Origin: Macrostomum lignano
Taxonomy: Eukaryota
DNA length: 64,000 nucleotides
Assembly (NCBI GenBank): GCA_002269645.1
Contig: NIVC01000209.1
Location: 62,001 to 126,000, forward strand
Direction of reading: 5' to 3'
The position numbers and the translations under genes are program-made. The notes under the pieces are model-generated. The model was not told the origin of the DNA, did not search any database, and was given only the letters and a program-made list of their open reading frames with translations. Of this stretch, positions 122 through 20,691 are shown one piece after another (the stretch's first letter is position 1; the number at the start of each line of letters is the position of its first letter).

Positions 122-2256
122 CTGGTCAGCAGCTGGGTCACCGTACTCTTGCCCGCCCCAGACCGGCCGCACACGGCCACAACGCAGCCGCTGGGCACCG
201 TCAGGCTGACGCCGTCCAGCACTACGGCGTCCGGCCGGCCGGGATACGCAAATCGGACATTCTCCAACCGGACAAGATCCTGTCCGGCCGATACAGGGGC
301 CGCCAGTTCGGTCAGCAGGCCCGGACGACCACGATCGATTTCTATGCAGGGCCGACTGTCCAGCAGGCGGAATACTCGACCGCCGGCTGTGGCGCCTTTG
401 ATTGCGTGGCCAAACAGGGGCGACAGGTTGGCGGCCGAGCGCATTGCGGTCTGCACGCCCACCAGGTAGGCCGTGAGCTCGCCGGCCGTGAGCTCGCCCC
501 GGCCGATGCAGACGCCGCCGCCGCACAGGACTGTGAGTACTACTCCGTTCACGGCTAGGTTTGATAGGGCCTGGTAGGATTTAATAAAATAAACAGCATT
601 TACCAAGCGAGCTTTGTATAGTTTCGCTACATATCGGATGTACTTAAGTAATTGTAGATATTTCCGATACAAATCGGCCTTCTTAATTAGCTGTCTATCG
701 GAAGTTTTGCATACTTTCGATACATATCGGCATTTTCAATTAGATATCGACATACACTTATGTGGCTGGTTTTGCATACTTTCGATACATATCGGCATTT
801 TCAATTAGCTAGCGACATATACTTATGTGGCTGGTTTTGCATACTTTCGATACATATCGGTATGTTTTTAAATCCATAAAAACTTCACCTGGAACAGTCC
901 AATGCCCAGTGCCAATCGTCTGGCCAGAGCAGCAGCCTCTTCCACCTGTCCCTCGTAGAGTCGCAACTCTTCGGCCTCCATGCCGAACGCTTTGACGCTG
1001 CGCATCTGTGTCAGGGCTTCGTGCGCCACCGCGTTGGCGGCAGCTTGTTGCGCGGCGGCTCGCTTGCTCAGAGCTCGAAGCATAGAGCCGAGGCCCAAGC
1101 CGACGGCAACAACTAGGGGAATGTACAGCAGAAAAAATGCCGACAGTCTGGGCGACATGGCCACCAAATAGCCGAGGCTGCCAACTGTTTGGGTGGCGTT
1201 GCGGAGGCCCTGCGACACGGCCGACTTGAATGCGCTTTTGAAGTCCTGCGATTGAATTGGAATAAACGCAGGTATAGTTGTCTTGGACCGGGAGATGCAC
1301 ATTGAGGAGTAATGGGGAATCCTAAGGATCGTATGTACATTGAGGAGTAATGGGGAATCCTAAGAATCGTTATTACATTGAGGGGTAATGGGGAATCCTA
1401 AGAATCGTATGTACATTGAGGAGTAATGGGGAATCCTAAGAATCGTATGTACATTGAGGAGTAATGGGGAATCCTAAGAATCGTATGTACATTGAGGAGT
1501 AATGGGGAATCCTAAGAATCGTGTGTACATTGAGGAGTAATGGGGAATCCTAAGAATCGTATGTACATTGAGGAGTAATGGGGAATCCTAAGAATCGTAT
1601 GTACATTGAGGAGTAATGGGGAATCCTAAGAATCGTATGTACATTGAGGAGTAATGGGGAATCCTAAGAATCGTATGTACATTGAGGAGTAATGGGGAAT
1701 CCTAAGAATCGTATGTACATTGAGGAGTAATGGGGAATCCTAAGAATCGTATGTACATTGATGAGTAATGGGGAATCCTAAGAATCGTATGTACATTGAA
1801 GGGTAATGGGGAATCCTAAGAATCGTATGTACATTGAGGAGTAATGGGGAATCCTAAGTATTGTATGTACATTGAGGGGTAGTGGGGAATCCAAAGAATC
1901 GTGTGTAGATTAAGGGACAGTGGGGAATCCAAAGAATCGTGTGTACATTGAGGAGTAGTGGGAATTCAAAGAATTGTGTGTACATTGAAGGAGAGAGTAC
2001 ATTATTAGATCGCGCAGCCACTCACTTGAACATCGCCAGACAATCTGCTGAGCAGTTCGGCGGAGCGGTGCCGATCAAAGAAGGCCACGTCCTGAGTCAG
2101 CAGGGTGGCCATCAGCCGGCGTCGGAGTCGGGCGGCCAAATTTTCGCCAACGCAGCCGAGCAGGGAGATGTAGGCGAATGTGACGCCGCTCTGTTCGGGG
2201 GCAAAGGGGAGTTATCTGCTCTAAGCATGAGCTAACGATGGTATGGACAAACAGAA

Positions 2257-2331
<75 letters not shown>

Positions 2332-3173
2332 AAGACAGACAGACCGACAGGCAGAAAGACAGACAGACAGACAGAAAGACAGGCAGACAGACAGAGGAAT
2401 AGACAGACAGGCAGAAAGACAGACAGATGAATAGACAGACAGGCAGACAGACAGACACAGACAGACAAAGACAAAGAAGACGAGCTTGCCAGTTATATGT
2501 TATTTGCCTCAGAGCCGCCATCTCACCTGAGCAGCATACACTCCCAGCAGCCTCAGAGCCGCCATCTCACCTGAGCAGCATACACTCCCAGCAGCCTCAG
2601 AGCCGGGCCCATCACAGTCTTCAACTGGTCCCAATCTGCGCCCTGCAGGCGCATCACCGAGTCCACAACCTGGCTGATCCCGACAGGAATTTGAACGTTC
2701 AGCAGAGCGGCGGCAACGGAAGCGACCACCGCAGCCAGAAGCAAATGAAGATCCGGAAGCAGCAGACTGCCCAGCAGGCGCCAACTGAACTTACCGACAT
2801 CGTCGTCGACAGAACGGGACACCGCAGACGCATCTTCATCGGTGCGCGCCAGTTCTGCAGACGGAGCAGTTTCTGCTCGAACAACTCCGCCGCCTAATGA
2901 GAACAACGATGCCGATGCTGACAGCCAATCAGAGCTTGCCACGTAGCAGCCCAACCCGACGCCACCGCCAACAACAGCAGCGGCCGAGCCTAATGCCAAA
3001 CGAACTCCTCGTCGGCCTATTAAAGCTACTAAAGGTCTACGACGCTTAGCAACGGTTGCTAATAGCAAAGAGGCATAGGAAGAGATTGATCTGCTGCGGA
3101 TTGCAGACGACAAGTTGAAAATTTGACCAGCCGGTGGCCGCCTGGTGGGCAGCTGGCGAATTCGAACCACCAA
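122..3173 (-). CDS. ABCB8: Mitochondrial ABC half-transporter (ABCB8/ABCB10 family); 3' part runs off the window start
   Basis: Exons (minus) 3173-2571, 2190-2026, 1245-889, 570-122, all GT-AG and in phase. Spliced product reads ...[52 protein letters not shown]|[15 protein letters not shown]..., matching recalled ABCB8 TMD motifs; Walker [10 protein letters not shown]. No in-frame ATG before TM1; the ORF starts at acceptor cag|TTG. Confidence 0.9.
610..870. repeat. ~60-bp degenerate tandem repeat in ABCB8 intron
   Basis: Repeated TTTCGATACATATCGGCATTTTCAATTAG...ACTTATGTGGCTGGTTTTGCATAC units. Confidence 0.8.
1297..1990. repeat. 38-bp minisatellite (~18 copies) in ABCB8 intron
   Basis: Unit ACATTGAGGAGTAATGGGGAATCCTAAGAATCGTATGT. 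Confidence 0.95.
2243..2472. repeat. (CAGA)n microsatellite in ABCB8 intron 1
   Basis: Direct reading of acag/caga repeats. Confidence 0.95.
2506..2605. repeat. 44-bp tandem duplication spanning the ABCB8 exon 1 end and 5' splice site
   Basis: GCCTCAGAGCCGCCATCTCACCTGAGCAGCATACACTCCCAGCA x2 plus a partial third copy; gives two CAG|GTGAGA donors on the minus strand (after 2571 and after 2527). Confidence 0.9.
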
Positions 3174-3379
3174 CTGCGAGAGAGCCAGGAGCGTATTAAT
3201 GACAGCAGTTACAGCAACAATAAAGTCCTCCTTAGGAAGCCTTAAATCCCGTGTCTAAGCTAGAATCTTAATAAAAAGTACATCACGTCCCGAAAATCCT
3301 GGCCCAAGATCCTAAGCGGACACTGACACATCTCGGTCCTGAAAATTTGTCAGAAGCCTACAACGAGTCGTTTTAACAA

Positions 3380-3790
3380 GCTCGAAGCTTCACAAGCTCG
3401 ACAAGCTCTCACAAGCTCGAGAAGCTCTCAAAAGCTCTCACAAGCTCTCACAAGCTCTCACAAGCTCGACAAGCTCTAAAAAGCTCTCACAAGCTCGACA
3501 AGCTCTCACAAGCTCTCACAAGCTCTCAAAAGCTCTCACAAGCTCGACAAGCTCTCACAAGCTCTCAAAAGCTCTCACAAGCTCGACAAGCTCTCACAAG
3601 CTCTCACAAGCTCTCAAAAGCTCTCACAAGCTCTCACAAGCTCTCAAAAGCTCTCACAAGTTCGACAAGCTCTCACAAGCTCTCACAAGCTCTCACAAGC
3701 TCTCACAAGCTCGAAGCTTCACAAGCTTCACAAGCTCCCACAAGCTCGAAACTTCACAAACTCCCAAGTTTCACAAACTGGAAGCTTCAC
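3380..3790. repeat. 10-bp minisatellite (AAGCTCTCAC)n
   Basis: Direct reading; variants AAGCTCGAC and AAGCTCTCAA. Confidence 0.9.
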
Positions 3791-4664
3791 ATCGTCGAGC
3801 TTATAAGCTTATATTATTAAAGCAAAAAGCAGGATTTAAGTTTCCAGGTTGTGAAATTGGTCTCCGATGAAACTTGGTCGTCCTTTTACTTGGCGTATCA
3901 ACTAATATGGATGATTTCTCGACTTAACGGGAATCAGAACGGCCAAGAAGGGGTAATAAATTTCTTAGATATGGTTCTGTTACTCAATCTACACTGTTAG
4001 GTGGTAAAGGAAAATCGAAATTAAGAACTTAAGAACAAGAAGATTAACAAGGGATAAGTTTATTTATTCTAATTTATTAACCTGTCAATAAATATTACGC
4101 TCGTAATAACATCAAATGCTTAAACAGTGCATCAAAATAGCAGAAAATTTAGATTATTTTTATACCAACAAAGAATTATAAAGAACCTTTATAAACACAC
4201 AAATCTACAATAACTTGTAGACATGGACACAATGAATAAGTGAATGACACTAGTTTACTAGTGTTTGAAACTAGTAAAGTAGTGTCATTCACGCATGTTT
4301 GAAAAGTCACTTACGCTACATATCGGTTATTTGCTACAACTGGAATAGTTGAGAATTTGTAACCAGCTTAAAGTATGAATAGTGCTTTTTAAGCATCGTC
4401 AGGATTTTAAAATAACCGTGTAAAGTTATTTACGCTACATATCGGTAATGAAAATAGTAGGCAAGATAGTAGTAGAGGGTAGACTAGAGTTTAAAAAGCT
4501 TTCTTAAGAGGTGATACGCGTAAATTGCTTTAATTAGCCGAAATGATCTCTTAGTCTCTTTAATAGTTAACTTGGTACAAAGCTATCTTCGATACATATC
4601 GGCAATCAAGTTAGCATAATCCCTTTAGTGCTTTTCTTTCCCAAGTAGACTGTTTTGTTAGAGT

Positions 4665-5950
4665 CTACTTGCTGCCGGCGCCACCAGACACGATGGCGCC
4701 CAGACGGCCAAGAATAGCGCCGCCCAGTTCGTTAAGGGAGGCCGTCATCGACTGAGCATCAACTTTGGACGAAACGGCGGCGCTAGCGGAGGTGGCGGCA
4801 GACTCGACAGCAGCGGTCAGCTGTTGACGCCTCCGACGGCGTTGATAGTCCTGCGCTAGGCGCTGCGCTCCAGCGTAGAGAGCGGCGCCAAGCAGGAAGG
4901 CCGTTATCAGGGCGGCGCCTTCCTGCATGGCATTTGCAGAGATGCAGATTTAATAAGTAAACTTCAAACAAAATGTTTTCTATACTACTAGTTACAAAAT
5001 TTAGTAGAGTGAAATGGTTTTAAAAAGCCTTAAAAAGCACAAAAAGCACGGATATAAAAAGGGGGTTTGTGCTTATTAGAAACATATTGCTGCTTTCAAT
5101 CATTATCATCACTTTTCAAGGTAGCCTTCTACCCTTGTAGCCTTCACGCTTCACCTGTAGCAACATATACTTCTCCAATTGTGAGACTGTGAGTCAAGAT
5201 GAATCATGATGCGAGGATCACTGGGTCATGTTGTACTGTACAGTGCAGGTCAATCTTCGGTAGGTTATTGTAAGCGTTAAAATATAGCTAGTCTGCAAGA
5301 TTCAATTCAGACTAATGAGAAAAGTAGACAAATAAAGATTTGAATTGTAAAATCTCTCTCATAGCCCCGAAAAATGTCACCATAAAAGAAACGTTTGTCT
5401 GTGCACACTAAAAGTGGTGGGAGAGCACAGGATTAGAGAGCCAATCCCGAACCTGTACTTTAGCGCGAGGTTCGACCTCTACTTTTAGTGTGTCAACACC
5501 CACCTTAGAGGCCAGAGCGACCGCAGCTCGAACGGACAAGCTAGAAATAATCTGCACTGTTCTCAACGCCGCAGAGGTCACCGACTGAGCAGCCCGACGC
5601 AGCCGATGCTCAGGCTCCAGCAGCAGCATCAAAGCCAGCTGCACGCACGAGGCGGCCGCCAGAGCGCCGCCAAGGATTTTGAAAATCTTCAACGAATACT
5701 GAATCCAGCCGTCAATAGACTTGTCCTTTGTAAAGCTACTAGTAGGAACTTGTTTAACTTTTTTGACACTTTCTGCGAGACAAACACTACTAATACCACT
5801 TCTAGTAGTAAGACTAGCACGTACTATGCTACCCTGTGCATGCGCGAAAACAACTGCTGCCCCCGCAGTAGCGCCAGATAATAAAATCAACCGACGACAA
5901 GATGTTGACAGGGTCAGGCTGGTAGCCCGCTGGGCAAGGATGCGCCAAGC
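4665..5950 (-). CDS. Uncharacterised ~250-aa membrane protein with a probable mitochondrial presequence
   Basis: Exons 5950-5453 and 4922-4665 join in phase 0 (KVQ|EGAALITAFLLG) via CAG|gttcgg...atgcag|GAA. N-terminus AWRILAQRATSLTLSTSCRRL is R/S/T/L-rich with no acidic residues; 2-3 hydrophobic segments; starts at ttttcag|GCT with no ATG. Confidence 0.65.
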
Positions 5951-6164
5951 CTGAAAATGTTATTAAGATAAGACTTGAAAACTAAAAGAGATTTATACAT
6001 GTACAATACACAGCTAAATACCTTTTTCTGAAAAATTACACTTTTGAAATCCGAATCGTGGGAGTGGCGTCTTATTCCCGAGAAGGGAAATTTACTGGGG
6101 GGATCCTGGACGACGGGGATTTCTGAATGAGTATTCGTGTGAGTGAATTCTGCTAATTGGATAC

Positions 6165-6610
6165 CCCTCTTAGTGACCACTGCTGATAAGATTCCTCTCT
6201 TAGTGAAGTCTGCTAACGGTATCCCCCTTAGGGACCTCTGCCGATGGGATTCACCCCTTAGTTACCCCTGCTGATGGGATTCTCCTCGGGGTGACTTCTG
6301 CTAATGGAATTCTCCCCTTAGTGACCCCTGCTGATGGGATTCTCCTCGGGGTGACTTCTGCTAATGGGATTCTTCCCTCGGTGACCTCTGCTCTGCTGAT
6401 GGAATTCTCCCCTTAGTGACCTCTGCTGATGGGATTCTCCCATTAGTGACCTCTGCTGAGGGTTTTCCCTTCGTAGTGACCTCTTCTGATGGGATTCTCC
6501 CCTTAGTGACCTCTGCTGAGGGTATTCCCTTCGTAGTGACCTCTTCTGATGGGATTCTCCCCTTAGTGACCTCTGCTGAGGGTATTCCCTTCGTAGTGAC
6601 CTCTGTGCTG
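6165..6610. repeat. ~30-33-bp degenerate minisatellite
   Basis: Units like GTGACCTCTGCTGATGGGATTCTCCCCTTA. Confidence 0.85.
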
Positions 6611-7664
6611 AGAGGGTTCCCTCAGAGCGATTCTTGATAAAGGAAATCCCCGAGAATCTTAATTTCTGCTAAGGGATGCCCAGGAGGGGTTCTTGCTGAG
6701 TATTCCCCAAGCAGTGATGAGTATAAAAATCGGTTCCTTACAGTGATTTCAGCTGAGGAATTTTCAGATTCTCGTAGTTTCTGCTTTGGTAAATCCCCAG
6801 AAGTGATTTCTGCTTAGAATTACCTGGGTTTCATAGAGGCGACTGCTTTCAGGGGGACACAATCATAAAGTACATGTAACCTATAAGGAAGCAAATGCCT
6901 ATTCAGTCCATGCCTTGTTTAAAGAGCACAAATAGATTTTTGACTTACATTTATCACAATCTGATCTAATTCCACTATATTCGGTTGATTTGTCTCAATC
7001 TATCTATTTAGGTAGGTGAAACGTTAAATTAAGGCGCATTTTATACGAGTGCAGCTCGGTAATTGCCAGGTGTTTGTACTTCGCTTTGACTCGTGTATAT
7101 GTATTTTACATGTAGCATACATGTAGCTACGTAATATAATCAATACAATCTCGAAGAGATTCTCTGCAATGTAGTTTTATAAAGTGCTAAACTCTACTAC
7201 TCTAAGTAAGTAGATTAACCAAGTTAGATCAATTTTTTGTTATAAAATGAATAAGAAAGCACTTTGCTGCAACAAAGTTGGCTTAAAAATTGCATTTAAT
7301 GTGTGAAATATTTTTTATAATTCATTGCAAAGAATCTCTGTAATCTTGTAATGAAAGCGCTCTATTTCGATTTACGCGTAGTTTTGAATAAAAAACGGCA
7401 CAATCTAAAAATAATAAATAAACAAGAGGAACATGAAAATAACAATTGCAGATTAAGAATGTTCAATTGACGAAGACAAAGCAACAGCACAAATACAATG
7501 GCTAATAAATTGAATAGGGCCTGTTTGAAGATTACAAGGATTCGAATTCTAAATATATGGATTCCGTACCCAAATACTGTCAAGGTGTTCAATATACTCG
7601 TACAAAAGGAGTTCGAAAAAAGCTTGGGTCTTAAAAAGGTGGAATCGCAACATATCGATTGCAG

Positions 7665-8849
7665 TCAGTCAGTCTCTTTGCTTTCGTTCAGACTTACTTG
7701 CTGCTCGGAACTAATCTCTGCAGGCGATTCAGTTTTCTCTTTAAAAACAGATTTTTCCACTTCTGTAGCGTCCGTACTCAGCTGCTGCTGCTGCTGCTGT
7801 TGCTCTTGCAGCTGCAAAGGCGGCGACTGTACTGCACCCTCTTCGCACTCGCTAACGGGTTTCAACAGCAATTGAGCAGAACTGCTTCGCTGAGGCTTTA
7901 TCATTAGAGAAGCTGGCGGCGGCATGTGCGGAGGCTGTGAAGACGACAATGATGACGACAGTGGCGGCGGCGGGGTCGGTGGGCCTTGCGAAGCGTGAAA
8001 CGACGTTGTTGTCGGAGGCGGCGGCGGTGGCGGCGCCTGACTGAAGTCGATGCCGGCAGGAATTTCTACGCTTTTAGTTGCCTGAGCTCGACGAATCAGA
8101 TTCTGCGAATAGTCGATGGTTTTCGAGCGCAAGAAGGTCTTGGCCGATTCGAGCACAGAGCCAGAGCCGGAATTAGCAGCGGAAGCGGAACCAGCAGCAC
8201 CAGCAGCATCTGGAGCATCGGCAGCTGTTGGAGAGTCTGAAGTGCTCAATCTGTGCACAACATCGGCCGAGCTACGCTTAATAGCGTCAGTGACGCTGGC
8301 AGCCATGCTGCGCCTTCTCCGCTCGTAGTCTAGCTGCTGCTTTGTGAACAGGGCATTTCTAGCCAACTCGCCCATCGACTGAAAGCTGCTCCGACTACGG
8401 CCGATCGAACGCAAAGCCGACAGGACGCAATCGACGTCGGTCACGTGACCAGAAATATCCCGATCGAGGCGAGACACTTCGGCGCGTTGAGCTGTCAGAC
8501 GGGGCACAGTCTTTCGCACGTGCTCCTCAATTCTATAGAGCGCTAGCGACGGCTCGTTTGCTAATATTCTAGCCACTTCGCTCATCCGATCGGCCAGGGC
8601 TCGAGCTCGGGACTCCGTTTCGTTTGACATCTTGCGACTGTTAATATTATTAATGCTGCTAGGACTGCTGCCGATGCTGCCAACGCTAGCGAAGTTAGAC
8701 CGACCGGCGTAGATCAACTGCACGCTGTTTTCCATATAAAAAGCACAATTTTTTGTAGGCCTTTGTCTCGCGCGCTCCTGCCGTGAAAAGTACCGGTTGT
8801 ACGTTTGTTTTTTTAAACTGCGCCTTTCTGTGGCGGTTCGTCTTGTCAT
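7665..8849 (-). CDS. BORCS8: BORC subunit 8 (MEF2BNB) homolog with a long low-complexity C-terminal extension
   Basis: ILANEPSLALYRIEEHVRKTVPRL resembles the recalled BORCS8 motif VLANEPSVALYRLQEHVRRSLPEL. Single exon; start uncertain (ATG at 8849, 8735 or 8630; conserved part starts at 8630). Confidence 0.8.
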   Translation of the reverse strand: MTRRTATERRSLKKQTYNRYFSRQERARQRPTKNCAFYMENSVQLIYAGRSNFASVGSIGSSPSSINNINSRKMSNETESRARALADRMSEVARILANEPSLALYRIEEHVRKTVPRLTAQRAEVSRLDRDISGHVTDVDCVLSALRSIGRSRSSFQSMGELARNALFTKQQLDYERRRRSMAASVTDAIKRSSADVVHRLSTSDSPTAADAPDAAGAAGSASAANSGSGSVLESAKTFLRSKTIDYSQNLIRRAQATKSVEIPAGIDFSQAPPPPPPPTTTSFHASQGPPTPPPPLSSSLSSSQPPHMPPPASLMIKPQRSSSAQLLLKPVSECEEGAVQSPPLQLQEQQQQQQQLSTDATEVEKSVFKEKTESPAEISSEQQVSLNESKETD

Positions 8850-11400
8850 GCGAAAAAATAATATTGGTAGGTTAGACTGATTTGCTATGTTGCAATCCCA
8901 AAACTTGATAAGAGTACTATTAATGTCACGTTTATAAGGCCGCCTCCACCCCTAACATCAAGTTACGAATTCTAGCTTAGCAACAAACTATAAATAGCTA
9001 AATAAAAAAATTAACAAAGGCGGCGGAAAGCTCAACAAGCGAGTCATTTATATATCACTGGGATGTTAGATCTCATTAACTTGAAAGCCTGTCGCGAGTC
9101 GCATCATTCTAGAACTATTTGGTTTGCTTTCAATGTAAATTCCAACTAAACAACTGGAGATAGAGAGAGAGGCAACACAAGCAAAAGAACCATATAAGTA
9201 TTCATCATAATCGAATTTAAAATATAGGGTATTTTAACAAGAAATTATTGGAAACAAAAGAGAAAACTAAGAATTTTGCAAACTAACTCGCGAACGCGTG
9301 GTCGGTTATGTTTTTTTCCAGTTTCAGCAAAAACCATAACACAGTAATGATAGTATTAAACATAAGCAGTAAGAGTAGTAGCGTAATGCTAATCAACCGA
9401 TGAAAATTGAATTATAATAGTTTGTACCTGGCAGGCGCAAATGAACTCGACAGAGGATCGGGAGATTTCTATTTTGGAAGTTTAATCGTATCGATATAAT
9501 TAGTGGATAAAAATATTTTTAACAGGACAGTTTGACATTTATATAGTACGGGGAATTAAGATAACAAACTGCATAGCATACTACTATAGTTGGCACTGCA
9601 ATGCATTTTAAGGTTTGAAATTTATTAGAGAACAGGTGGCAAAGATTCAACTAATTAATGTTTCGTTAATTAGAGGTGCGCAGGTGCGAAGGTGTACAAT
9701 TATTTATTCAAGCGCTTGTTATTCAAGTGTTATTTAAAATGACTGGCTTAGCTTTTTATTGCAGTAGGTACGGATACTTATTAAAGAAATCAGCAAGTTA
9801 AATAAAATGAGCCTCAGCTAATTTACCTACTCTAACCAGCCTGTCTAATCACGAATAGAAAATTAATTAACCAACAAAAAATCGACTGGATTTTTTAGCA
9901 CAAAACATTTTTTTTTCAAATTCACTGAAACAACACAGTCATCGCATTTTTTGTTTTCTATTCATCTCTGCATCGGCAACATCAAAGGCCAACAACAAGG
10001 CATTATAGACCGCCGCACAGGCACACCGTTAAATTTGTCGATAATTATAAAACGCGGCCCGCACCTTAGCCCCAGTTATCTCTTAAGTTTTTTATAATTT
10101 AATTGTGTTGAACAAAATTACGCAAATTAAAAACACGTTATCATTAATGTAATAGGAAGCGGCAGGAAGGCGGTGGGTGGGGGTACTTAAACGATCGCTT
10201 ATCATCAGATAACGCAGACAGACACAGCCGCACAATTGCGACCCTGAAAGGCGCTGCTGCACTCTGAATTATGATAATAACAGCGCGAAAGTAGACTGAT
10301 AACTACTGTAGCTTATAGGCTTTGAACTGGAAAATAGCAGAGGGAGTTGTGGACTGTTAAATTTGTTATTTCTTGCTAACTCGGTACACACAGGAAAAGA
10401 AAGCCAAATAGAACACACGTTTTTTAGGAATTATTTTGTTTATATGTATATAAACTGCTTTCCGAACAAAGAAGTTCGTTTCCTAGAGATGGTAAAAATA
10501 CAACAGTTTAATTGTTTTTAACGCGCATCCGGTGCCAAATACTACTACAAACAGGTCATGTATTTTTATAATTTTAAAACTGTTTACCCGAACAGTTAGG
10601 CGAGCTACTAGATAGACTTCAGATGCTCGGCAAAGATCGAAGCAATTCAAAAAGGAAAGAACGGCAAAACTGCATACGAATATGTTAAATAATTGATTAA
10701 TTGAATTTCAACTTTGCCGGGCTGCTACAGAGTCTGCGCTGAAGCAATCAGTGCAATATTTATTGAGTGAAGGTATTAATAGCAATAGCAGGAGAGAAAA
10801 ATAGAAGTTAACAAAATAAAACGACCTACAACTAAAAAATTATTTTGTTTGTGTTCTCTAAAATAAGTCGCACCTTTTTAAAACAGTCTAAACAAATTAA
10901 TATCGAGCTTATTTAATATTAATAATCCTTATAACTGATTTGGCAGACATTTTATTCGGCGCGATAACTATATTTTTGAACTCCTTAACCAGACGTTAGT
11001 CAATTAAATGTAATAATATTCGACTAGGGAGGGACCTGTGGACATGCGTTACAGTTAATAATTAATAAGTTTTAATTAGATGATTTGAAAGGCCGAAACG
11101 GAACGCGCAAAAAAGCTAGCTTAAACATGAAACGGATTTCCCATGCCACTCTTGTAGGTAGATTATGAGCGCACAAAGATAGTAAACCACAAAATCGACT
11201 GGCCCACAATAGCAGCAATAAATGGAGTCAGTAGCCCCGGGCGCAGACTTGGCGGCTCCCCATCAAACCAAAAAAACAACGCAGACTCTTCATCATTGCA
11301 GACGACAGTCAAGATGGTAACAGTTCTACCGCCTCCCCATCAAAACAAACAGGCGAGAGAGAGAGAGAGGGGGTGAAAGACGACCGACCCTCTCTGCGCT

Positions 11401-12071
11401 TCACGGCTTGCTCTTGTCCTGCATAGCGCGAACGGCAACAACACCTTCTTCCTTCATTGAGGCCAGCACCTGCAATTGGAATTGGCGAGTGGAGCGGAAC
11501 TTAGGGATATTTTTTTATCCTCGATTAACAACCATCATCAAACTCTCACACCTGGTGAATGCTAATCTCCTTGACCTTGAATACGAAATATCATACTTCG
11601 GGAATGCTAATCTCCAATTACCCGGATAATTGCAGAAAGATCACTCACCTGAATGACAAGAGACTCGTCAGCATCGAAGCGCCTGCGAATCTCGCTGCCA
11701 ATATCGCCCTCGGGCAGACGGATGTCCTCCTTCATGTCGCCATTCTCTGACATGAGCTCGAGAAAGCCCTCATCCGAGATATTAACCAGCTGGTACTCAC
11801 GCCTAGCCACATTAGGCACCTGCATGTTGGCGCTGGACGGGCTAATATCTTCGTATTTCTTGTTAGTAAAGATGTCGATAGCGACCAGGTGCACCTTGGC
11901 AGAGCCGTGTTTGCCAGTCTTCGAGGTGCTCATTTCAACAATTTTGCAGGGGCGATCTTTGATTAGAACGTGGCCGCCTTTGCGCAAGTTGGAGCAGATG
12001 GTCGGGACGAACAGCGAAGCGCCGGCATCGGCGGAATGGTACTCATTGTCGTCGTCGAAATTGTTGGCCAT
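11401..12071 (-). CDS. eIF5A: Eukaryotic translation initiation factor 5A
   Basis: Exons 12071-11649 and 11469-11401 (CAG|gtgagt...tgcag|GTG). [26 protein letters not shown] with the hypusine Lys intact; C-terminus [22 protein letters not shown]. Confidence 0.95.
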
Positions 12072-12234
12072 TGCTAATTTTAAAGGCTTAGTAGTTATGT
12101 AAATTTGGGGAATGAGCGGTCACTACGCTGTGCTGAAATGATTTTTGAAAGATATCAATTTTAGATAACAAACTACAGACAGTAAAATCTACTTTGAGTG
12201 CGATGGTAAGTCAAAACATTGAGGGCAGAATCTT

Positions 12235-13125
12235 AGAGACAGCTGAGGGACGATTCTGCGAGGCATCCGAAATTTAAAGACTTAAAGACAACTGAAAACG
12301 ATTCTTAAAGACCGCTGAGGGTGACTGAGAAACAGCTGAGGAGCAATTCATATAGACGGATGAGGGGCGATTTTTAGAGACAGCCGAAGAGCGGTTCTTA
12401 GAGACAGCTGAGGGGCGATTATTAGAGACAGCTGAGGGGGACTATTAGAGACAGCTGAGGGGCGATTATTAGAGACAGCTGAGGGGGACTATTAGAGACA
12501 GCTGAGGGGCGATTATTAAAGACAGCTGAGGGGGACTATTAGAGACAGCTGAGGGGCGATTATTAAAGACAGCTGAGGGGGACTATTAGAGACAGCTGAG
12601 GGGGACTATTAGAGACAGCTGAGGGGCGATTATTAAAGACAGCTGAGGGGGACTATTAGAGACAGCTGAGGGGGACTATTAGAGACAGCTGAGGGGGGAT
12701 GTTAAAGACAGCTGAAGGGGACTATTAGAGACAGCTGAGGGGGACTATTAGAGACAGCTGAGGGGCGATTATTAAAGACAGCTGAGGGGGACTATTAGAG
12801 ACAGCTGAGGGGGACTATTAGAGACAGCTGAGGGGGGATGTTAAAGACAGCTGAGGGGCGACTATTAGAGACAGCTGAGGGGCGACTAATAGAGACAGCT
12901 GAGGGGCGATTATTAGAGACAGCTGAGGGGGGATGTTAAAGACAGCTGAGGGGGACTATTAGAGACAGCTGAGGGGGACTATTAGAGACAGCTGAGGGGC
13001 GACTATTAGAGACAGCTGAGGGAGACTAATAGAGACAGCTGAGGGGCGATTATTAGAGACAGCTGAGGGGCGATTCTTAGAGACAGCTGAGGGGCGATTC
13101 TTAGAGACAGCTGAGGGGCGATTCG
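12235..13125. repeat. 23-bp minisatellite between TOP2 and eIF5A
   Basis: Unit GAGACAGCTGAGGGGGACTATTA. Confidence 0.95.
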
Positions 13126-14074
13126 CTTATACTGTGTTGATAGGGAAGTTTAAAATAAAGTATAGCAAGAAACAGACAGCAAAACTTATTATCGATTTCG
13201 CAAATCCTGATTATATATTAAACTACAAAAAACGAAAAAGTTTGTAACAATTTTTACTAAATCATTTCAGTTCATAAATAAAAAGCTTCATTAAGTTTTT
13301 TTGCATAAGCTAAAAGAGTAATGTTGATAAAACCCAAAGCTTAACAGATCAAGCTTTCCTTTAAGATAAGACCAATAAAATGCACGACTTGCTTAAGCGT
13401 GGACTGAATACGTACGCGAACACACGGATAGCTAGGTGTGTGAAAAGGAGATTTTCAAAGTGTTACAGATAGATAAAATACAATGGCTAAAACACTTAGG
13501 AAATGATAAGAGCCATATACGTAGTAAATTAGCAAGTAATAAGGGAGTGTGTATACGTTATCAAGACAAGAATACGATAATAAAAGCTGACAATCAAAAC
13601 CGCTGACAAGTGTCTGTCAGTCTGTTAAACACAATCAGAACAAGCAAAAAATGACCGGGTGCTGATAACTACGTACATGTATATAGCTATTTAACTAAAA
13701 CCAACGCTTATAATGCGCTTTGGAAAGAAACTTCTCAAGTTACAAACATTAGAATGCAAAACGTAATTATGAAAAAATGCTCGCAATAACATAATTTTAG
13801 TATTTTTAATGTTGTAAAACAGGTTAAAAGCAGCACGCATACGTATTTAGAAATTGTAATATTATCGCATGTATATCATCTTTCGATTCAAAATTTACAA
13901 TCAAAAAGAATTTATTAAAAAGATCAAAATTACTACTCGTAACTAGCAAAAAACATCAATCAATAAATCAGAAATATTTCAACAGGTAAAAAATTCAATC
14001 ATTAATTTAAAAACCGATCAAGAAGCATCAAGAAATCAAGAAGAAAAAATTCACCATAACAATGTCCACGTCGC

Positions 14075-17000
14075 TCAATCCACGTCGCTCAGACCTTCGC
14101 TATCCGAATAGACATATTTAACAGTTGATTTAGAGCCACGACTTGGTCGATTGGCTGCCGTCGACGCGGCGGCACCTGAGGAGGCGCCGATTTCATCATC
14201 GTCAGAGGCGCCGCCGCCGGCGCCACCAACAAAGCTACCATCGCTGTCGCTGCCCCGTTCCCACGGGTTCCGTTTCGAAGAGTTTTTGTTAGTAGTAGCG
14301 GTCGACTTTTTTGTTGTCGCCGATTTTGGTTTGTTGTCAGTTTTTGCTTTTTTAACGGCCGGCTGTTTTGTTGGCTTCCTCGAGTCTGTAATTTTCTTCG
14401 ATTTTGGCTTTGCTGTTGTTGCTGTTATTTTCTTTTTGACAGGCGTTGACTGACCGGCCGGTTTGAATTCAGCATCGTCGCTTAGCGAAGACAAAGAATC
14501 GTCGCTGGTATCGGAGCTGTCATCGGCAGCTTTGCGCTTCTTCGATGGCTGCTGCTTGGGCGACTTTTTAATCGTCGCCTGCTCTTTTTTAACAGCGGAA
14601 GCTGTTGGACGCTTAGAGTTGTTCGAGCCGGCGGCCGCGGAGGTGGATGGCTTGCCAACCAAGCAGGAGACATCGACGCCCGAGTCGGACAGTCTCTGCC
14701 AGAGCGGCTTAGGCCCGGCGCCACCAAATTCGCCGTCGCTATCGTCGAACTCGAAACTATTAGCAGATGTTGATTTCTGCTGTTGCTGCTTACGCGGCGA
14801 TTTCTCGATCTTATCGCCAGCAGCAGTAGTGGCGGCGGAAGCAGACTTAGCTCTAGCTAGCATCTGTTCGTCAATCTGAGGCGCTATTCTACGCGCACCT
14901 GGAGTTGGCAAGTGTTCAACACTAATCCGAGTTGATTTAGCCGCCCGAGCTTTATTACTGGCCGCGTTAGAGGCGGCCAATTTAGCGGCGGTCAGTTTCT
15001 TAGCTAATTCTTCGGCTCGCTCAGCCTCAGCTTTATTGAGCTGGTCGATGGCAGCCTGAAGACTGTCTAAATCTTCCGACCACATTGTACGCGGCGTCTT
15101 CGCCCTTAAAGCGGTTAATTCGGCCGATTTAGCGTCGCGTTGACGCAATAATTCGTCTTTCCGCTCCCGAGTCAGAGAGAGCATCGGTAGGCTTAAAAGA
15201 TAGTCATAGTCGGGCCCATCGTCAGTGGCGGCGCTGGTGTCTGCTTCGTCTGCGACGCTAAAATTGGCTAAAGAGGCCAGATTGGCTCGCCAACTGCGAA
15301 CTGGATCGGAGTCGAATCCGGAACTCTGCAGCAGCTTCACGCAGGCAGCTCTGCGGGAGGGGCAAGTTGTTTAGTAAAGGTAAGGCCTTGTTAATTGACA
15401 GTTAGGCTATCATAAAAGACACAATAATACACACTAGAAAATGGCTAAGGAGACATCAGTAGCCTCATAGATTACTAGAAAGTGGCTAAGGAGACATTAG
15501 TAGCCTCATCGATTACTAGAAAGTGGCTAAGGAGACATTAGTAGCCTCATCGATTACTAGAAAGTGGCTAAGGAGACATTAGTAGCCTCATCGATTACTA
15601 GAAAGTGGCTAAGGAGACATCAGTAGCCTCATGGATGGCTAGGAAGTAGCTAAGGGACATCAGTAGCCTCATCGATTACTAGAAAGTGGCTAAGGAGACA
15701 TTAGTAGCCTCATGGATGGCTAGGAAGTAGCTAAGGGACATCAGTAGCCTTATCGATTACTAGAAAGTGGCTAAGGAGACATTAGTAGCCTCATCGATTA
15801 CTAGGAAGTGGCTAAGGGACATCAGTAGCCTCATAGATTACTAGAAAGTGGCTAAGGAGACATTAGTAGCCTCATCGATTACTAGGAAGTGGCTAAGGGA
15901 CATCAGTAGCCTCATCGATTACTAGAAAGTGGCTAAGGAGACATCAGTAGCCTTATCGATGACTAGGAAGTGGCTAAGGAGACATCAGTAGCCTTATCGA
16001 TGACTAAGAAATAACTAGGATAGTGGCGTCCATTTTTTATACTAAGCAAGAGACTGGGGATTGACGATTGCAAAAGCTTTTTATTGATCTACTTGCTGCG
16101 CCACACTCACCGAGTCAAATCTTCAATAACAAGCCGCTTCTCAATCTTGTCAACAATGAACCGAGCCTGATTTTCCAGCTTCAAACTTTCGGCAGCCAGT
16201 TTGCCTAAGAGATAGAGCTTTCGTTTCTCATACCAGTCAAGACGAAGACTGAAAAATTCGCGCAGAATCTCTTCGACATTGTTGTACCGTTTGATGCAAT
16301 CGTTCTGATCGAACAGGATCATGAAGCTAGTGGTGAGGCTGGTCTGCAACTTGAAGAATTTATGCAGGCCACTCTCTTCGGCGTCGCGCAGCTTGTCGGC
16401 AGACATTTGCACTACAAACTTGACAGTAGTGTCCGTGTGATACTCTTTGTAATCTTGTATCTTTGCCGGCTGCTTCTCCGTACCATTGAGCATCGGCTCC
16501 AATACGGACTCTTTATAAGTTTGAGTCCAAGTTTTCACTGGCAGCTCTGTGATCTCGACCGTATTGTCGTCAATGACGGCAATCTCGCCAAATATAGCGT
16601 ATTTATTAGTATCTAATTCGCGTATCTCGCCGCGAAAACCGCGAAACGCTGGCAGCATAGGTTTGGGCTCGTCCCCAGCTAGCATTCGGCGCAGATTAGC
16701 TATGATATCGCCGACGTCAAAGTTGGGTATCTTAGTGCTCCAACCCGTGCCAATGCCGTCGGCGCCGTTCACCAGCACCATTGGCAGTACTGGCATGTAC
16801 CACTTCGGCTCAATCGTGAGATTGTCGTCCCGTTGAAATTCTAGCATCGGCTCGTCGGCCGAGTTAAACACGTGGCGAGTCAGCGGCGACAGTGAGGTGA
16901 ATATGTAGCGCGGGCTGGCCGCGTCTCTGCCGCCGTGCAGTCTGGTGCCGAATTGGCCTTGCGGTAGCAGCAGATTCAAATTATTAGAGCCGACAAAGTC

Positions 17001-19448: not shown

Positions 19449-19648
19449 GATCGGACCTGCGCGTCTTTGCTACTTTTTTGTTCAAGTGCGCTGCGTTAGA
19501 TTAGTGACTCAGCCGTGTCTCTTAAGGCGCAGACAGAAACGTTTAAAATGCAAAAATTGCTTAATAAATTTAATCGCACTAAATTAATATACATATATAT
19601 AAATAGGCTTTAGTAATTATGCGCATCAATCCACTACTAATTAAAATC

Positions 19649-19964
19649 AGGGGTCGGCAAACGTTTTAACTCAAGGGTCAGATAGAGAACTTAGAGCATG
19701 GCTGTGGACCTGAGGAGGGGAGAGAGGAGACGGAATAGAGAAGGGAGACGGGAGATAGGAGAGGCGAGGGAATAAAAGAGAAGGGAGTTGAGAGAGAGAT
19801 AAAATATGAGAGGACAGGTGAGCAAGCGGAGTGGAGAGGAGAGAAGAGATTAGAGAAGAGCGCTGAGAAAGGACACAAATTTTAAGCGGGCCGGATTGCT
19901 ATTGTGAAGTTGTAAAGGACCCGAAGGCCGGATAGAGGCTCCGGGGCAGAATTTGCCGACGCTG
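19649..19964. mobile_element. hAT-type MITE
   Basis: Ends CAGGGGTCGGCAAAC ... ATTTGCCGACGCTG (imperfect TIRs), purine-rich centre; related to the copy at 24245-24417; TSD degraded. Confidence 0.65.
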
Positions 19965-20691
19965 ACTTAAAATTTTCATCTGCACCTTCATGCACGGCTA
20001 AGAAAAGCTTTAAACAAAAATAAGTTTAAAAAGCCATAAAATGCAAAATAACACTATATTTCAAAAGTTGTTAATACACGATTATTTGACACGCATTGGT
20101 AACTAAACAGTTCGGATTATTTAAATTAAAGCTAACCTTGATTATATTGACTAAACATGAAAAAAATCAGAAAGTGGATCATCAAATGGACTCAAAACGC
20201 TTCAAGCAACTAGATTTTTAGCAACCAGGGAAAGGAAGGTTAAACGCTTTTCAATCTACAAATAGCTGTTAAATTTGCATTATTGCATTATTATGTTTGC
20301 TTCAAAAAATCAAGCCTACACAGTGGTTTATCAATGGGGCAAACTAAAATAAAACTAAAATAGATGCCAATATTTAAGAATCAATACGCACCGGAATTAT
20401 TTATATGCGATGGTGCAACCTATTTTGAATTAATTTAAGTAATAATGAAGGTATATGATTTATTGATCAAGGAAAATTCTTATATCAACTAGAACTACAT
20501 AGTGCCCGATGGAGAATCCGCCTCTTCTGTACGCAAAAGTTTCAAAATGTTTTATTTCATGTTTTAACAATTTACGCTTAAGTGCACCAGTTTGTTAATC
20601 ACTCCCGTCTTAATATTTTAAACATTTTTTATTATTTAGACAAAATTCTTTATGCTGTTTAAAACTTTTTAAAAAAAATCTAGGTAAGTTT

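What the first reader, a model, noticed from the sequence alone, without database searches (positions are those of the whole stretch)
3170..5953. Two adjacent mitochondrial genes lack an ATG and start in phase 0 at a splice acceptor (start codon probably from a spliced leader)
Seen: ABCB8 begins ctctcgcag|TTG GTG GTT CGA (3173) with an upstream in-frame stop and no Met until after TM1. The neighbour begins cattttcag|GCT TGG CGC (5950) with no Met for about 110 codons. Adding one ATG gives presequence-like starts [13 protein letters not shown] and M-AWRILAQRATS. Knowledge: flatworm spliced leaders end in a conserved AUG that can serve as initiator Met. Inference: their N-termini and mitochondrial targeting depend on trans-splicing. 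An upstream ATG micro-exon is the alternative; I saw no convincing ATG|GT candidate.
Basis: partly seen in the sequence, partly recalled or inferred. Interest (0 to 1): 0.72.

Follow-up and report, generated by a model that had tools for sequence, protein, structure and literature searches.

The report
Spliced-leader AUG starts two flatworm genes
Two neighbouring genes of the flatworm Macrostomum lignano (the mitochondrial ABC transporter ABCB8 and a small orphan membrane protein) have no start codon of their own and most likely borrow the AUG at the end of the trans-spliced leader, a mechanism already known in flatworms, so this is a correct but fairly ordinary finding.

Summary
The window is Macrostomum lignano Mlig_3_7 contig NIVC01000209.1, bases 62001-126000. 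On the minus strand two adjacent reading frames begin directly after a CAG acceptor. ABCB8 begins at 3173; the orphan gene Mlig016839.g1 begins at 5950. Both are in phase 0, both have in-frame stops just upstream, and neither has an in-frame ATG for 173 or 107 codons.

All seven public models of the two genes and their paralogue copies lack a Met, and the three GenBank ones are labelled partial. The 5' ends of the three GenBank models lie 0, -3 and +9 nt from the acceptors. Two neighbouring models (eIF5A here, SLC26 at the paralogue locus) start at ordinary genomic ATGs. The M. lignano spliced leader ends in ATG, and 30-39% of its genes are trans-spliced.

Both are destroyed in the paralogous locus, which keeps both Met-less frames intact.

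The best explanation is therefore that the leader donates the initiator AUG (confidence about 0.8). No reads containing the leader could be inspected here. The mechanism was shown in Schistosoma in 2006, so these are new members of a known kind. A mitochondrial location is well founded for ABCB8. For the orphan gene it is only inferred from a presequence-like N-terminus.

The parts
3174..3193 (-). Outron end and 3' splice acceptor of ABCB8 (cgctcctggctctctcgcag|). This is the proposed SL trans-splice site.
   Evidence: Searches show the sequence. The GenBank CDS of PAA87959.1 starts at the next base. The acceptor and the 108 nt upstream of it are identical in the paralogue.
2571..3173 (-). ABCB8 (Mlig014609.g1) exon 1, 201 codons. 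It begins TTG GTG GTT in phase 0 and has no in-frame ATG until codon 174.
   Evidence: 100% identity to P0004, which starts LVVRIRQ. Pfam ABC_membrane starts at residue 145. Only 3 of 603 nt differ from the paralogue.
3255..3257 (-). In-frame TAG in the ABCB8 outron, 27 codons upstream of the acceptor.
2026..2190 (-). ABCB8 exon 2.
   Evidence: protein identity to P0004.
889..1245 (-). ABCB8 exon 3.
122..570 (-). ABCB8 exon 4, which includes the Walker A motif. The gene continues beyond the left edge of the window (three more exons in L001).
5951..5970 (-). Outron end and acceptor of the neighbour gene (tcttaataacattttcag|). It contains in-frame TAA TAA at 5965-5960. TTTCAG matches the published M. 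lignano trans-splice acceptor motif [T/C]TNCAG.
5504..5950 (-). Neighbour gene (Mlig016839.g1) exon 1, 149 codons. It begins GCT TGG CGC in phase 0; the first in-frame ATG is codon 108.
   Evidence: The exon is 0 of 447 nt different from the paralogue, against 20 of 581 in its intron.
4665..4922 (-). Neighbour gene exon 2, including the TAG stop.
7665..8849 (-). Upstream same-strand gene, a BORCS8 homologue with its own ATGs. It is a possible first cistron of a polycistronic unit.
   Evidence: PF10167, E = 8e-30.
3287..3331 (-). Rejected candidate cis first exon for ABCB8 (ATG + 14 codons, then GAC|gtgatg, in phase 0).
   Evidence: Found. In the paralogue the ATG is ATA and the GT donor is AT.
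7692..7698 (-). Rejected candidate donor (CAA|gtaagt, in phase 0 with the BORCS8 ORF) that could cis-splice to the 5950 acceptor.
   Evidence: Found. It lies inside a 78-nt segment that is deleted in the paralogue, which keeps an intact copy of the neighbour gene.
3017..3018 (-). Internal AG (tttaatag|GCCGACG). It coincides with the 5' end of the UniProt ABCB8 models, which start RRGVRLAL. The SL AUG would be out of frame here.
3385..3791 (.). 10-bp-unit tandem repeat that fills much of the spacer between the neighbour gene and ABCB8.
6142..6656 (.). 30/60-bp tandem repeat in the spacer between BORCS8 and the neighbour gene.

Best explanation
Both genes are SL trans-spliced at the acceptors ending at 3174 (ABCB8) and 5951 (Mlig016839.g1). 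The 35-nt M. lignano spliced leader ends in AUG and joins in phase 0. Its AUG therefore becomes the initiator codon and gives the N-termini [13 protein letters not shown]... and M-AWRILAQRATS...

For ABCB8 this N-terminus is the presequence-like region plus the first transmembrane helix, so a full-length, importable protein cannot be made without the leader. The two genes probably lie downstream of BORCS8 in a same-strand, operon-like array whose spacers are padded with tandem repeats.

Shown:
- the genomic anatomy;
- the identity of the organism;
- the absence of a Met from every public model;
- the 5' ends of the GenBank models at the acceptors;
- the loss of the rival cis exons in the paralogue.

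Inferred:
- that the leader is actually joined at these sites;
- that its AUG is the codon used;
- that the orphan protein is mitochondrial;
- that the genes share one primary transcript.
For: 1. Organism. The window is 100% identical to M. lignano NIVC01000209.1.

2. The leader. The M. lignano SL is CGGTCTCTTACTGCGAAGACTCAATTTATTGCATG. 30-39% of genes are trans-spliced, and the acceptor motif is [T/C]TNCAG. The Macrostomum genome paper itself calls the final ATG a translation start codon.

3. Frame. Joined in phase 0, the SL gives long uninterrupted ORFs. The genome has in-frame stops 27 and 3-4 codons upstream of the two acceptors, and the next in-frame AUGs are codons 174 and 108.

4. The missing N-terminus is needed. 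Similarity to human ABCB8 structures starts at query residue 121-125 and Pfam ABC_membrane at residue 145. The start must therefore lie upstream of any genomic ATG.

5. Annotation. The GenBank models come from a pipeline that cuts transcripts at mapped SL-read peaks and then runs TransDecoder. They are 'partial' and Met-less. P0004 starts at the acceptor +0, the paralogue P0086 at -3, and P0002 at +9. eIF5A on the same contig and SLC26 on the paralogue contig, annotated in the same submission, start at genomic ATGs.

6. Paralogous locus L002. It keeps both acceptors and both Met-less frames. Codon 1 of ABCB8 changes TTG to CTG, which is synonymous. Exon divergence is 0-0.5% against 3.4% in an intron.

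7. Rival exons. Both in-phase upstream ATG...|GT candidates are lost in L002.

8. N-termini. There is no acidic residue in the first 82 or 60 residues, and the sequence is rich in R, S, A and L. Neighbouring cytosolic proteins have their first acidic residue at positions 3-9.
Against: - No SL-containing read, cDNA or peptide could be examined.
- The model 5' ends scatter by -3 to +9 nt. I could not confirm that they come from SL-read peaks rather than from where read coverage happens to begin.
- The ABCB8 acceptor is TCGCAG, one position off the published motif.
- The SL AUG has a weak Kozak context: U at -3, and U at +4 for ABCB8.
- The UniProt ABCB8 models start after a different AG (3018-3017), where the SL AUG would be out of frame.
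- The two genes carry different transcriptional-unit names (Mlig014609, Mlig016839). The annotators therefore did not join them into one precursor.
- The low exon divergence could partly reflect gene conversion. The outrons are also well conserved.
Confidence: 0.8

Rival explanations
1. An unannotated upstream cis exon, possibly far away or shared with the preceding gene, supplies a genomic ATG and is cis-spliced to the same acceptors. One version is an in-frame BORCS8-to-gene-2 read-through. Another is gene-2 exon 1 spliced to ABCB8. Both are possible because all these junctions are in phase 0.
For: In-phase candidates exist in this copy:
- ATG 3331...GAC|GT 3286 for ABCB8;
- the strong donor CAA|GTAAGT at 7698/7697, in phase with the BORCS8 ORF, for gene 2;
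- the gene-2 exon-1 donor (5504), which is in phase with the ABCB8 acceptor.

Parasitic flatworms are reported to share 3' acceptors extensively between cis- and trans-splicing.
Against: - The first two candidates are destroyed in the paralogous locus. There the ATG is ATA and the GT is AT, and a 78-nt deletion removes the GTAAGT donor. The paralogue still keeps intact Met-less copies of both genes.
- No public model (GenBank or UniProt) contains an upstream exon.
- The two genes carry separate gene names (Mlig014609.g1, Mlig016839.g1).
Confidence: 0.08
2. The mRNAs start at or near these acceptors, whether trans-spliced or not, but translation starts elsewhere. It could start at a near-cognate codon (TTG/GTG at the start of ABCB8) or at the first downstream in-frame AUG (Met174 or Met108) by leaky scanning, which would give N-terminally truncated proteins.
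For: The Kozak context of the SL AUG is weak (U at -3). ABCB8 exon 1 opens with TTG GTG, and with CTG GTG in the paralogue. The UniProt ABCB8 models begin at an internal AG where the SL AUG is out of frame.
Against: - Met174 lies after TM1 and inside the conserved ABC_membrane domain, so a product starting there would lack a conserved helix and any targeting signal.
- Four out-of-frame AUGs precede Met174.
- The Met-less N-terminal regions are as conserved between paralogues as the rest of the exons and much more than an intron.
- They have presequence composition.
- Gene 2 has no near-cognate codon at its start.
- The SL AUG is documented as a functional initiator in Schistosoma.
Confidence: 0.07
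3. It is an artefact. The first exons are missing because of an assembly gap or error, or the genes are decaying duplicates in a polyploid genome.
For: M. lignano assemblies are repeat-rich and partly duplicated. GenBank flags the CDSs as partial.
Against: - The window contains no N.
- Two independently assembled paralogous loci show the same structure, colinear over more than 12 kb.
- The ABCB8 frame is intact over seven exons with all ABC motifs, and is 45-51% identical to animal ABCB8.
- Exons are far less diverged than introns.
Confidence: 0.03

Closest known systems
Flatworm SL 3'-terminal AUG used as initiator methionine (Cheng, Cohen, Ndegwa & Davis, J Biol Chem 2006, Schistosoma mansoni; called 'slORFs' by slORFfinder, PMC9851317)
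   Same: The leader ends in AUG, the acceptor is in phase 0 with the main ORF, and no genomic in-frame AUG is available. The leader AUG is therefore needed to translate the correct frame. [quoted passage not shown]
   Different: The species is different: a free-living macrostomorph, in which use of the SL AUG has only been remarked on in passing. Two adjacent genes both depend on it. No experimental demonstration exists here.
M. lignano SL trans-splicing and operons (Wudarski et al. 2017, PMC5730564; Ustyantsev & Berezikov 2021, PMC8629364)
   Same: The genes are same-strand neighbours. The acceptor motif [T/C]TNCAG fits (exactly for gene 2). The spacers are inflated by tandem repeats and fall below about 1 kb once the repeats and a plausible 3' UTR are subtracted.
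   Different: The annotation gives the two genes different transcriptional-unit names. The poly(A) sites are not known to me, so membership of an operon is only inferred.
ABCB8 / MITOSUR, the mitochondrial inner-membrane ABC half-transporter (PDB 7EHL, 5OCH)
   Same: It is a half-transporter with ABC_membrane and ABC_tran domains. The best-scoring half-transporter structures are human ABCB8 (540 bits, against 395 bits for ABCB10). The top named database hits are the 'mitochondrial potassium channel ATP-binding subunit' at 45-51% identity. It has a long basic N-terminal extension.
   Different: The roughly 120-residue N-terminal extension is not alignable to other species. The start codon is not encoded in the gene.
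Nematode, trypanosome and dinoflagellate SL trans-splicing
   Same: A capped leader is added at a 3' acceptor, and polycistronic precursors are resolved.
   Different: As far as I know, those leaders normally serve only as 5' UTR. The terminal AUG is described as a feature of all reported parasitic-flatworm SLs.

Membership tests
SL trans-spliced mRNA (M. lignano) | The organism has an SL RNA whose leader is added to mRNAs. | tested here: met
   The window is 100% identical to M. lignano Mlig_3_7 contig NIVC01000209.1. The literature gives the 35-nt SL and reports that 30-39% of genes are trans-spliced.
SL trans-spliced mRNA (M. lignano) | [quoted passage not shown] | tested here: met
   Gene 2 has TTTCAG|G, an exact match. 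ABCB8 has TCGCAG|T, where CAG and the -6 pyrimidine match and -5 is C rather than T; its upstream tract is 13/17 pyrimidines.
SL trans-spliced mRNA (M. lignano) | The genome-colinear part of the mature mRNA begins at the acceptor, with no upstream exon. | tested here: met
   The GenBank transcript-derived CDSs start at +0 (P0004), -3 (P0086) and +9 (P0002) nt from the acceptors, are 'partial' and have no upstream exon.
SL trans-spliced mRNA (M. lignano) | Reads or cDNAs carry the SL joined to the exon. | not testable with these tools
   No M. lignano transcript contigs or per-gene SL tables were reachable.
SL-AUG-initiated ORF (Cheng et al. 2006 class) | The leader's terminal AUG is in frame with the main ORF. 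| tested here: met
   Both acceptors are in phase 0. The joined sequences give ORFs of 525+ and 235 codons.
SL-AUG-initiated ORF (Cheng et al. 2006 class) | No usable genomic in-frame AUG: there is a stop upstream in the outron, and the next AUG would delete essential sequence. | tested here: met
   In-frame stops lie at 3257-3255 and 5965-5960. The next in-frame AUGs are codons 174 and 108. For ABCB8 that is after TM1 and inside the ABC_membrane domain.
SL-AUG-initiated ORF (Cheng et al. 2006 class) | No cis-spliced upstream exon supplies an AUG. | tested here: inconclusive
   Within 4 kb, two plausible in-phase candidates were found, and both are lost in the paralogue. More distant or multi-exon leaders cannot be excluded without reads.
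SL-AUG-initiated ORF (Cheng et al. 2006 class) | The protein N-terminus or initiating ribosomes map to the SL AUG. | not testable with these tools
   This needs N-terminomics or initiation profiling.
ABCB8 (mitochondrial ABC half-transporter) | One ABC_membrane domain plus one ABC_tran domain, closest to ABCB8 among the B-family half-transporters. | tested here: met
   Pfam PF00664 at 3e-47 and PF00005. PDB 5OCH and 7EHL (ABCB8) score 540 bits, against 395 bits for ABCB10. Named hits are ABCB8/MITOSUR at 45-51% identity.
Mitochondrial presequence-bearing protein | An N-terminal segment that is basic, hydroxylated and free of acidic residues. | tested here: met
   ABCB8+M has 13 R/K and 0 D/E in its first 60 aa, with the first acidic residue at 83. 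Gene 2+M has 6 R/K and 0 D/E, with the first acidic residue at 61. Control proteins from the window have their first acidic residue at 3-9. This is composition only; no trained predictor or localisation data were used.
M. lignano operon (Ustyantsev & Berezikov criterion) | Adjacent same-strand genes, the downstream one trans-spliced, with a repeat-adjusted intergenic distance below 1 kb. | tested here: inconclusive
   The genes are on the same strand. The stop-to-acceptor distances are 1491 and 1714 nt, of which 407 and 515 nt are tandem repeats, and candidate poly(A) signals lie at 4078/4068 and 7300. The true poly(A) sites and the SL evidence are unknown, and the annotation uses separate transcriptional-unit names.

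The most novel reading that the evidence does not exclude
BORCS8, the orphan gene and ABCB8 form a conserved polycistron. In it, both downstream cistrons have irreversibly lost their own start codons, so mitochondrial import of both products depends on trans-splicing. Choice between the in-frame acceptor at 3173 and the out-of-frame AG at 3017 would act as a switch that turns full-length, importable ABCB8 on or off. The co-transcribed orphan two-helix membrane protein would be a lineage-specific partner of ABCB8; in vertebrates ABCB8 (MITOSUR) pairs with the pore subunit MITOK.
Probability: 0.07. Interest if true: 0.55.

Novelty: new member of a known kind. Interest (0 to 1): 0.3.

Why it matters
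The main value is practical. GenBank and UniProt list these proteins, and probably many others in M. lignano, as 5'-partial and Met-less. Adding the leader's Met completes them and restores their targeting signals, which affects localisation prediction, orthology calls and the design of transgenes in this model flatworm.

Biologically, it extends the Schistosoma observation to a basal free-living flatworm. It also gives a clean pair of cases in which a mitochondrial presequence exists only after trans-splicing. These cases could be used to test whether the leader AUG is an efficient initiator in vivo. No new mechanism is revealed.

Tried and rejected
1. Direct transcript evidence was not obtainable.
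- The clusters of both proteins contain only GenBank and UniProt models, with no transcript-derived members.
- The gene ids are absent from the searchable literature and from the held supplements.
- Wasik et al. 2015 is not held.

2. Logan transcript contigs of the closest non-Macrostomum ABCB8 relatives (L003-L006) have ordinary 5' UTRs and their own ATGs. They say nothing about flatworm SL use.

3. There is no SL RNA gene in the window, and there are no Rfam or tRNA hits.

4. Rival cis exons were enumerated and rejected by comparison with the paralogue.

5. The identity of the orphan gene stays unknown.
- There is no Pfam family at E < 0.1.
- There is no PDB sequence match.
- An exhaustive phmmer search of 1.84 billion representatives found only the protein itself and one spurious repeat protein.
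- The AlphaFold model has pLDDT 51, too poor for a fold search.
- The UniRef name 'CAP-Gly domain-containing protein' is not supported by Pfam.

6. A search with ABCB8 exon 1 alone found nothing, although the full-length query then found the identical GenBank protein. I treat as a limit of the word filter, not as evidence.

7. My first reconstruction of the last ABCB8 junction used GT donors and was wrong. The GenBank protein requires a GC-AG intron.

8. A FAH look-up meant to list more annotated genes in the window found no record.


Full report
**Where the window comes from**

A search with the neighbour gene's product returned a single cluster of Macrostomum lignano proteins. Fetching the contig that encodes the GenBank member showed that bases 15941-1 of the window are 100% identical to L001. 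L001 is NIVC01000209.1:56665-77941, reversed, from assembly Mlig_3_7. The window is therefore NIVC01000209.1:62001-126000, and window coordinate x equals record coordinate 62000 + x. The window contains no N. Both genes in the finding lie on the minus strand.

**Checking the observation**

ABCB8:
- The gene begins ...gctctctcgcag|TTG GTG GTT CGA at 3173.
- Exon 1 (3173-2571) ends CAG|gtgaga. Exons 2-4 are 2190-2026, 1245-889 and 570-122. Three further exons lie beyond the left edge of the window.
- The genomic frame has a TAG at 3257-3255, 27 codons upstream.
- The first in-frame ATG is codon 174 (2654-2652), and four out-of-frame ATGs precede it.

The neighbour gene:
- It begins ...taacattttcag|GCT TGG CGC at 5950.
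- In-frame TAA TAA lie at 5965-5960.
- The first in-frame ATG is codon 108 (5629).
- It has two exons (5950-5504 and 4922-4665) and gives 234 aa.

Both acceptors are in phase 0.

**What the genes are**

The first gene is an ABC half-transporter: Pfam ABC_membrane at 3e-47 plus ABC_tran.
- The best-scoring half-transporter structures are human ABCB8 (5OCH and 7EHL, 540 bits), against 395 bits for ABCB10.
- The best named database hits are 'mitochondrial potassium channel ATP-binding subunit' (ABCB8) at 45-51% identity.
- Similarity to the human structures starts at residue 121-125 and the Pfam domain at residue 145. Met174, which lies after predicted TM1, therefore cannot be the natural start.
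- GenBank lists the gene as BOX15_Mlig014609g1 (PAA87959.1, 719 aa, 'partial'), beginning LVVRIRQ.

The second gene is BOX15_Mlig016839g1 (PAA87960.1, 'partial').
- It has no Pfam family and no PDB match.
- It has no homologue outside M. lignano, even in an exhaustive HMMER scan of 1.84 billion representatives. The only other hit is a repeat protein that I judge spurious.
- A single-sequence AlphaFold model is all-helical but unreliable (pLDDT 51).
- It has one clear hydrophobic segment and a second candidate.
- I treat it as an orphan membrane protein. 'Mitochondrial' is an inference from its N-terminus only.

**The leader**

The literature gives a single 35-nt M. lignano spliced leader, CGGTCTCTTACTGCGAAGACTCAATTTATTGCATG. 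It is present on 30-39% of genes, and the acceptor motif is [T/C]TNCAG (PMC8629364 and PMC5730564).
- All reported parasitic-flatworm SLs end in AUG (PMC12582326).
- Cheng et al. 2006 showed that the AUG is in frame in 28% of S. mansoni trans-spliced transcripts and is required by more than 40 cDNAs (as summarised in PMC9851317).
- Gene 2's TTTCAG matches the acceptor motif exactly. ABCB8's TCGCAG matches except at position -5.
- Joining the SL in silico gives ...UUGCAUG|UUG GUG... and ...UUGCAUG|GCU UGG..., with uninterrupted ORFs.

**Evidence from existing annotation**

The GenBank annotation was built from genome-guided transcripts. These were cut at peaks of mapped, SL-trimmed reads (the TBONE pipeline) and then passed to TransDecoder.
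- In that annotation the ABCB8 CDS starts exactly at 3173. The paralogue on NIVC01000064.1 (PAA92079.1) starts 3 nt upstream, at the CAG. Gene 2 starts 9 nt downstream of its acceptor.
- All three are flagged partial and have no upstream exon.
- eIF5A on the same contig and SLC26 on the paralogue contig, annotated in the same submission, start at genomic ATGs. The pipeline therefore does find ATGs when they exist.
- UniProt models also lack a Met. I assume, from memory rather than from any tool result, that they derive from the earlier assembly. Gene 2 starts FQAWRIL, 6 nt upstream of the acceptor.
- The three UniProt ABCB8 models start RRGVRLAL, immediately after an internal AG at 3018-3017. 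A leader joined there would be out of frame. This may be a truncated cDNA or a minor unproductive site, and I could not resolve which.

**Testing the rival: an upstream cis exon**

I listed every ATG-initiated open segment within 4 kb upstream that ends at a GT in phase 0. Two are plausible.
- For ABCB8, ATG 3331 plus 14 codons is followed by GAC|gtgatg, which would leave a 113-nt intron.
- For gene 2, the strong donor CAA|gtaagt at 7698/7697 lies 11 codons before the stop of the upstream ORF. Pfam identifies that ORF as a BORCS8 homologue (PF10167, 8e-30). Splicing there would give an in-frame BORCS8-gene 2 fusion.

The paralogous locus L002 is colinear with this one from upstream of BORCS8 through ABCB8 exon 1, so it provides a test.
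- In L002 the ABCB8 candidate has ATA for ATG and AT for the GT donor.
- In L002 the BORCS8 donor lies within a 78-nt in-frame deletion.
- L002 nevertheless keeps both acceptors and intact Met-less copies of both genes. Its gene 2 encodes exactly UniProt A0A1I8HLL4.

These exons are therefore not conserved features. More distant leader exons cannot be excluded without reads, and no annotation contains one.

**Constraint on the Met-less N-termini**

Between paralogues, ABCB8 exon 1 differs at 3 of 603 nt:
- codon 1, TTG to CTG, synonymous;
- S105P;
- one further synonymous change.

Gene 2 exon 1 differs at 0 of 447 nt. Gene 2's intron differs at 20 of 581 nt plus indels. The regions upstream of the first genomic Met thus behave like coding sequence. 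The outrons are also well conserved, however: the 108 nt before the ABCB8 acceptor are identical. Gene conversion or regulatory constraint may therefore contribute.

With the leader Met added, the N-termini have no acidic residue for 82 and 60 residues and are rich in R, S, A and L. The four control proteins from the window have their first acidic residue at positions 3-9. This is the classical composition of a mitochondrial presequence (established knowledge). No trained predictor was available.

**Genomic context**

FAH, TOP2, eIF5A, BORCS8, gene 2 and ABCB8 all lie on the minus strand. The spacers from BORCS8 to gene 2 (1714 nt) and from gene 2 to ABCB8 (1491 nt) contain 515 and 407 nt of tandem repeat. 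After subtracting the repeats and a plausible 3' UTR, both fall under the 1-kb repeat-adjusted operon threshold of Ustyantsev & Berezikov. The poly(A) sites are unknown, however, and the annotators gave the genes separate transcriptional-unit names. An operon is therefore plausible but not shown.

**Conclusion**

The anatomy is real. The simplest account that fits every test is that the leader's AUG starts both proteins (about 0.8). The rivals are:
- an unseen cis exon (about 0.08);
- initiation elsewhere, giving truncated or non-AUG products (about 0.07);
- an artefact (about 0.03).

The mechanism is a textbook property of flatworm leaders. These are new examples in a species where it has only been noted in passing. 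Interest is modest (0.3) and mainly concerns annotation.

Noticed in passing
window 2506-2605 (minus strand; ABCB8 exon 1/intron 1 junction); L002 about 10660-10935: A 44-bp unit that contains the exon-1 donor (GCTGCTCAG|GTGAGATGG) is tandemly duplicated. It is present in 2.3 copies here, giving two identical donors at 2570 and 2526, and in about six or seven copies in the paralogue. Using any donor other than the first would shift the frame by 44 nt.
   Followed up: partly
window 7665-8849 (-): A 394-codon ORF encodes a BORCS8 homologue (PF10167). It has a long Pro/Gln-rich C-terminal extension. It is not among the GenBank genes listed for this contig. The paralogue copy carries in-frame indels of 6, 6 and 78 nt.
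   Followed up: partly
window 3017-3018 (-): An internal AG (tttaatag|GCCGACG) coincides with the 5' end of the three UniProt ABCB8 models, which start RRGVRLAL. A leader joined here would be out of frame and would give a 9-codon ORF. It may be a minor or unproductive trans-splice site, or a truncated cDNA.
   Followed up: partly
window 3174-3281 compared with 3282-3380 (-); alignment A2: The 108 nt immediately upstream of the ABCB8 acceptor are identical between the paralogues, whereas the next roughly 100 nt carry 10 substitutions. This may reflect constraint on the outron (a branch site or a regulatory element).
   Followed up: no
window 5504 (gene-2 exon-1 donor), 3173 (ABCB8 acceptor) and 7698 (BORCS8 donor): All of these junctions are in phase 0. 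Cis-splicing across cistrons of a polycistronic precursor would therefore give in-frame chimeras. No evidence shows that this happens.
   Followed up: partly
L001 18750-20098 (outside the window, ABCB8 last intron): Reproducing the GenBank protein (..VLEQGKRSDLL..) requires a GC-AG intron (GAG|gcgagt ... ttacag|CAAGGC). The UniProt models instead read through into the intron and end ..EASALAIFRV.
   Followed up: partly
window 1295-1993, 2246-2467, 3385-3791, 6142-6656, 12305-12999: Introns and spacers are packed with tandem arrays: a 38-bp unit x18, GACA x56, a 10-bp unit x37, 30/60-bp units, and 23/47/70-bp units. Copy numbers differ between the paralogues.
   Followed up: no
window about 18, 625, 716, 781, 846, 4314, 4433, 4588: A short near-palindromic motif (TTCGATACATATCGG / CGCTACATATCGG) recurs in ABCB8 introns and in the spacer between gene 2 and ABCB8. 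It is probably a dispersed repeat or MITE family.
   Followed up: no
window 11401-21957 (-): There is a same-strand run of housekeeping genes with their own ATGs: fumarylacetoacetase (ORF 20692-21957), topoisomerase II (ORFs 14075-19448) and eIF5A (11401-12071). Further right there are a ligand-gated ion channel fragment (38031-39116, -) and several GC-rich ORFs with no Pfam match (33.9-38 kb and 54-56 kb).
   Followed up: no
UniRef entry for gene 2 (A0A1I8HW53 / A0A1I8HLL4): The source name 'CAP-Gly domain-containing protein' is not supported. Pfam finds no domain at E < 0.1.
   Followed up: yes
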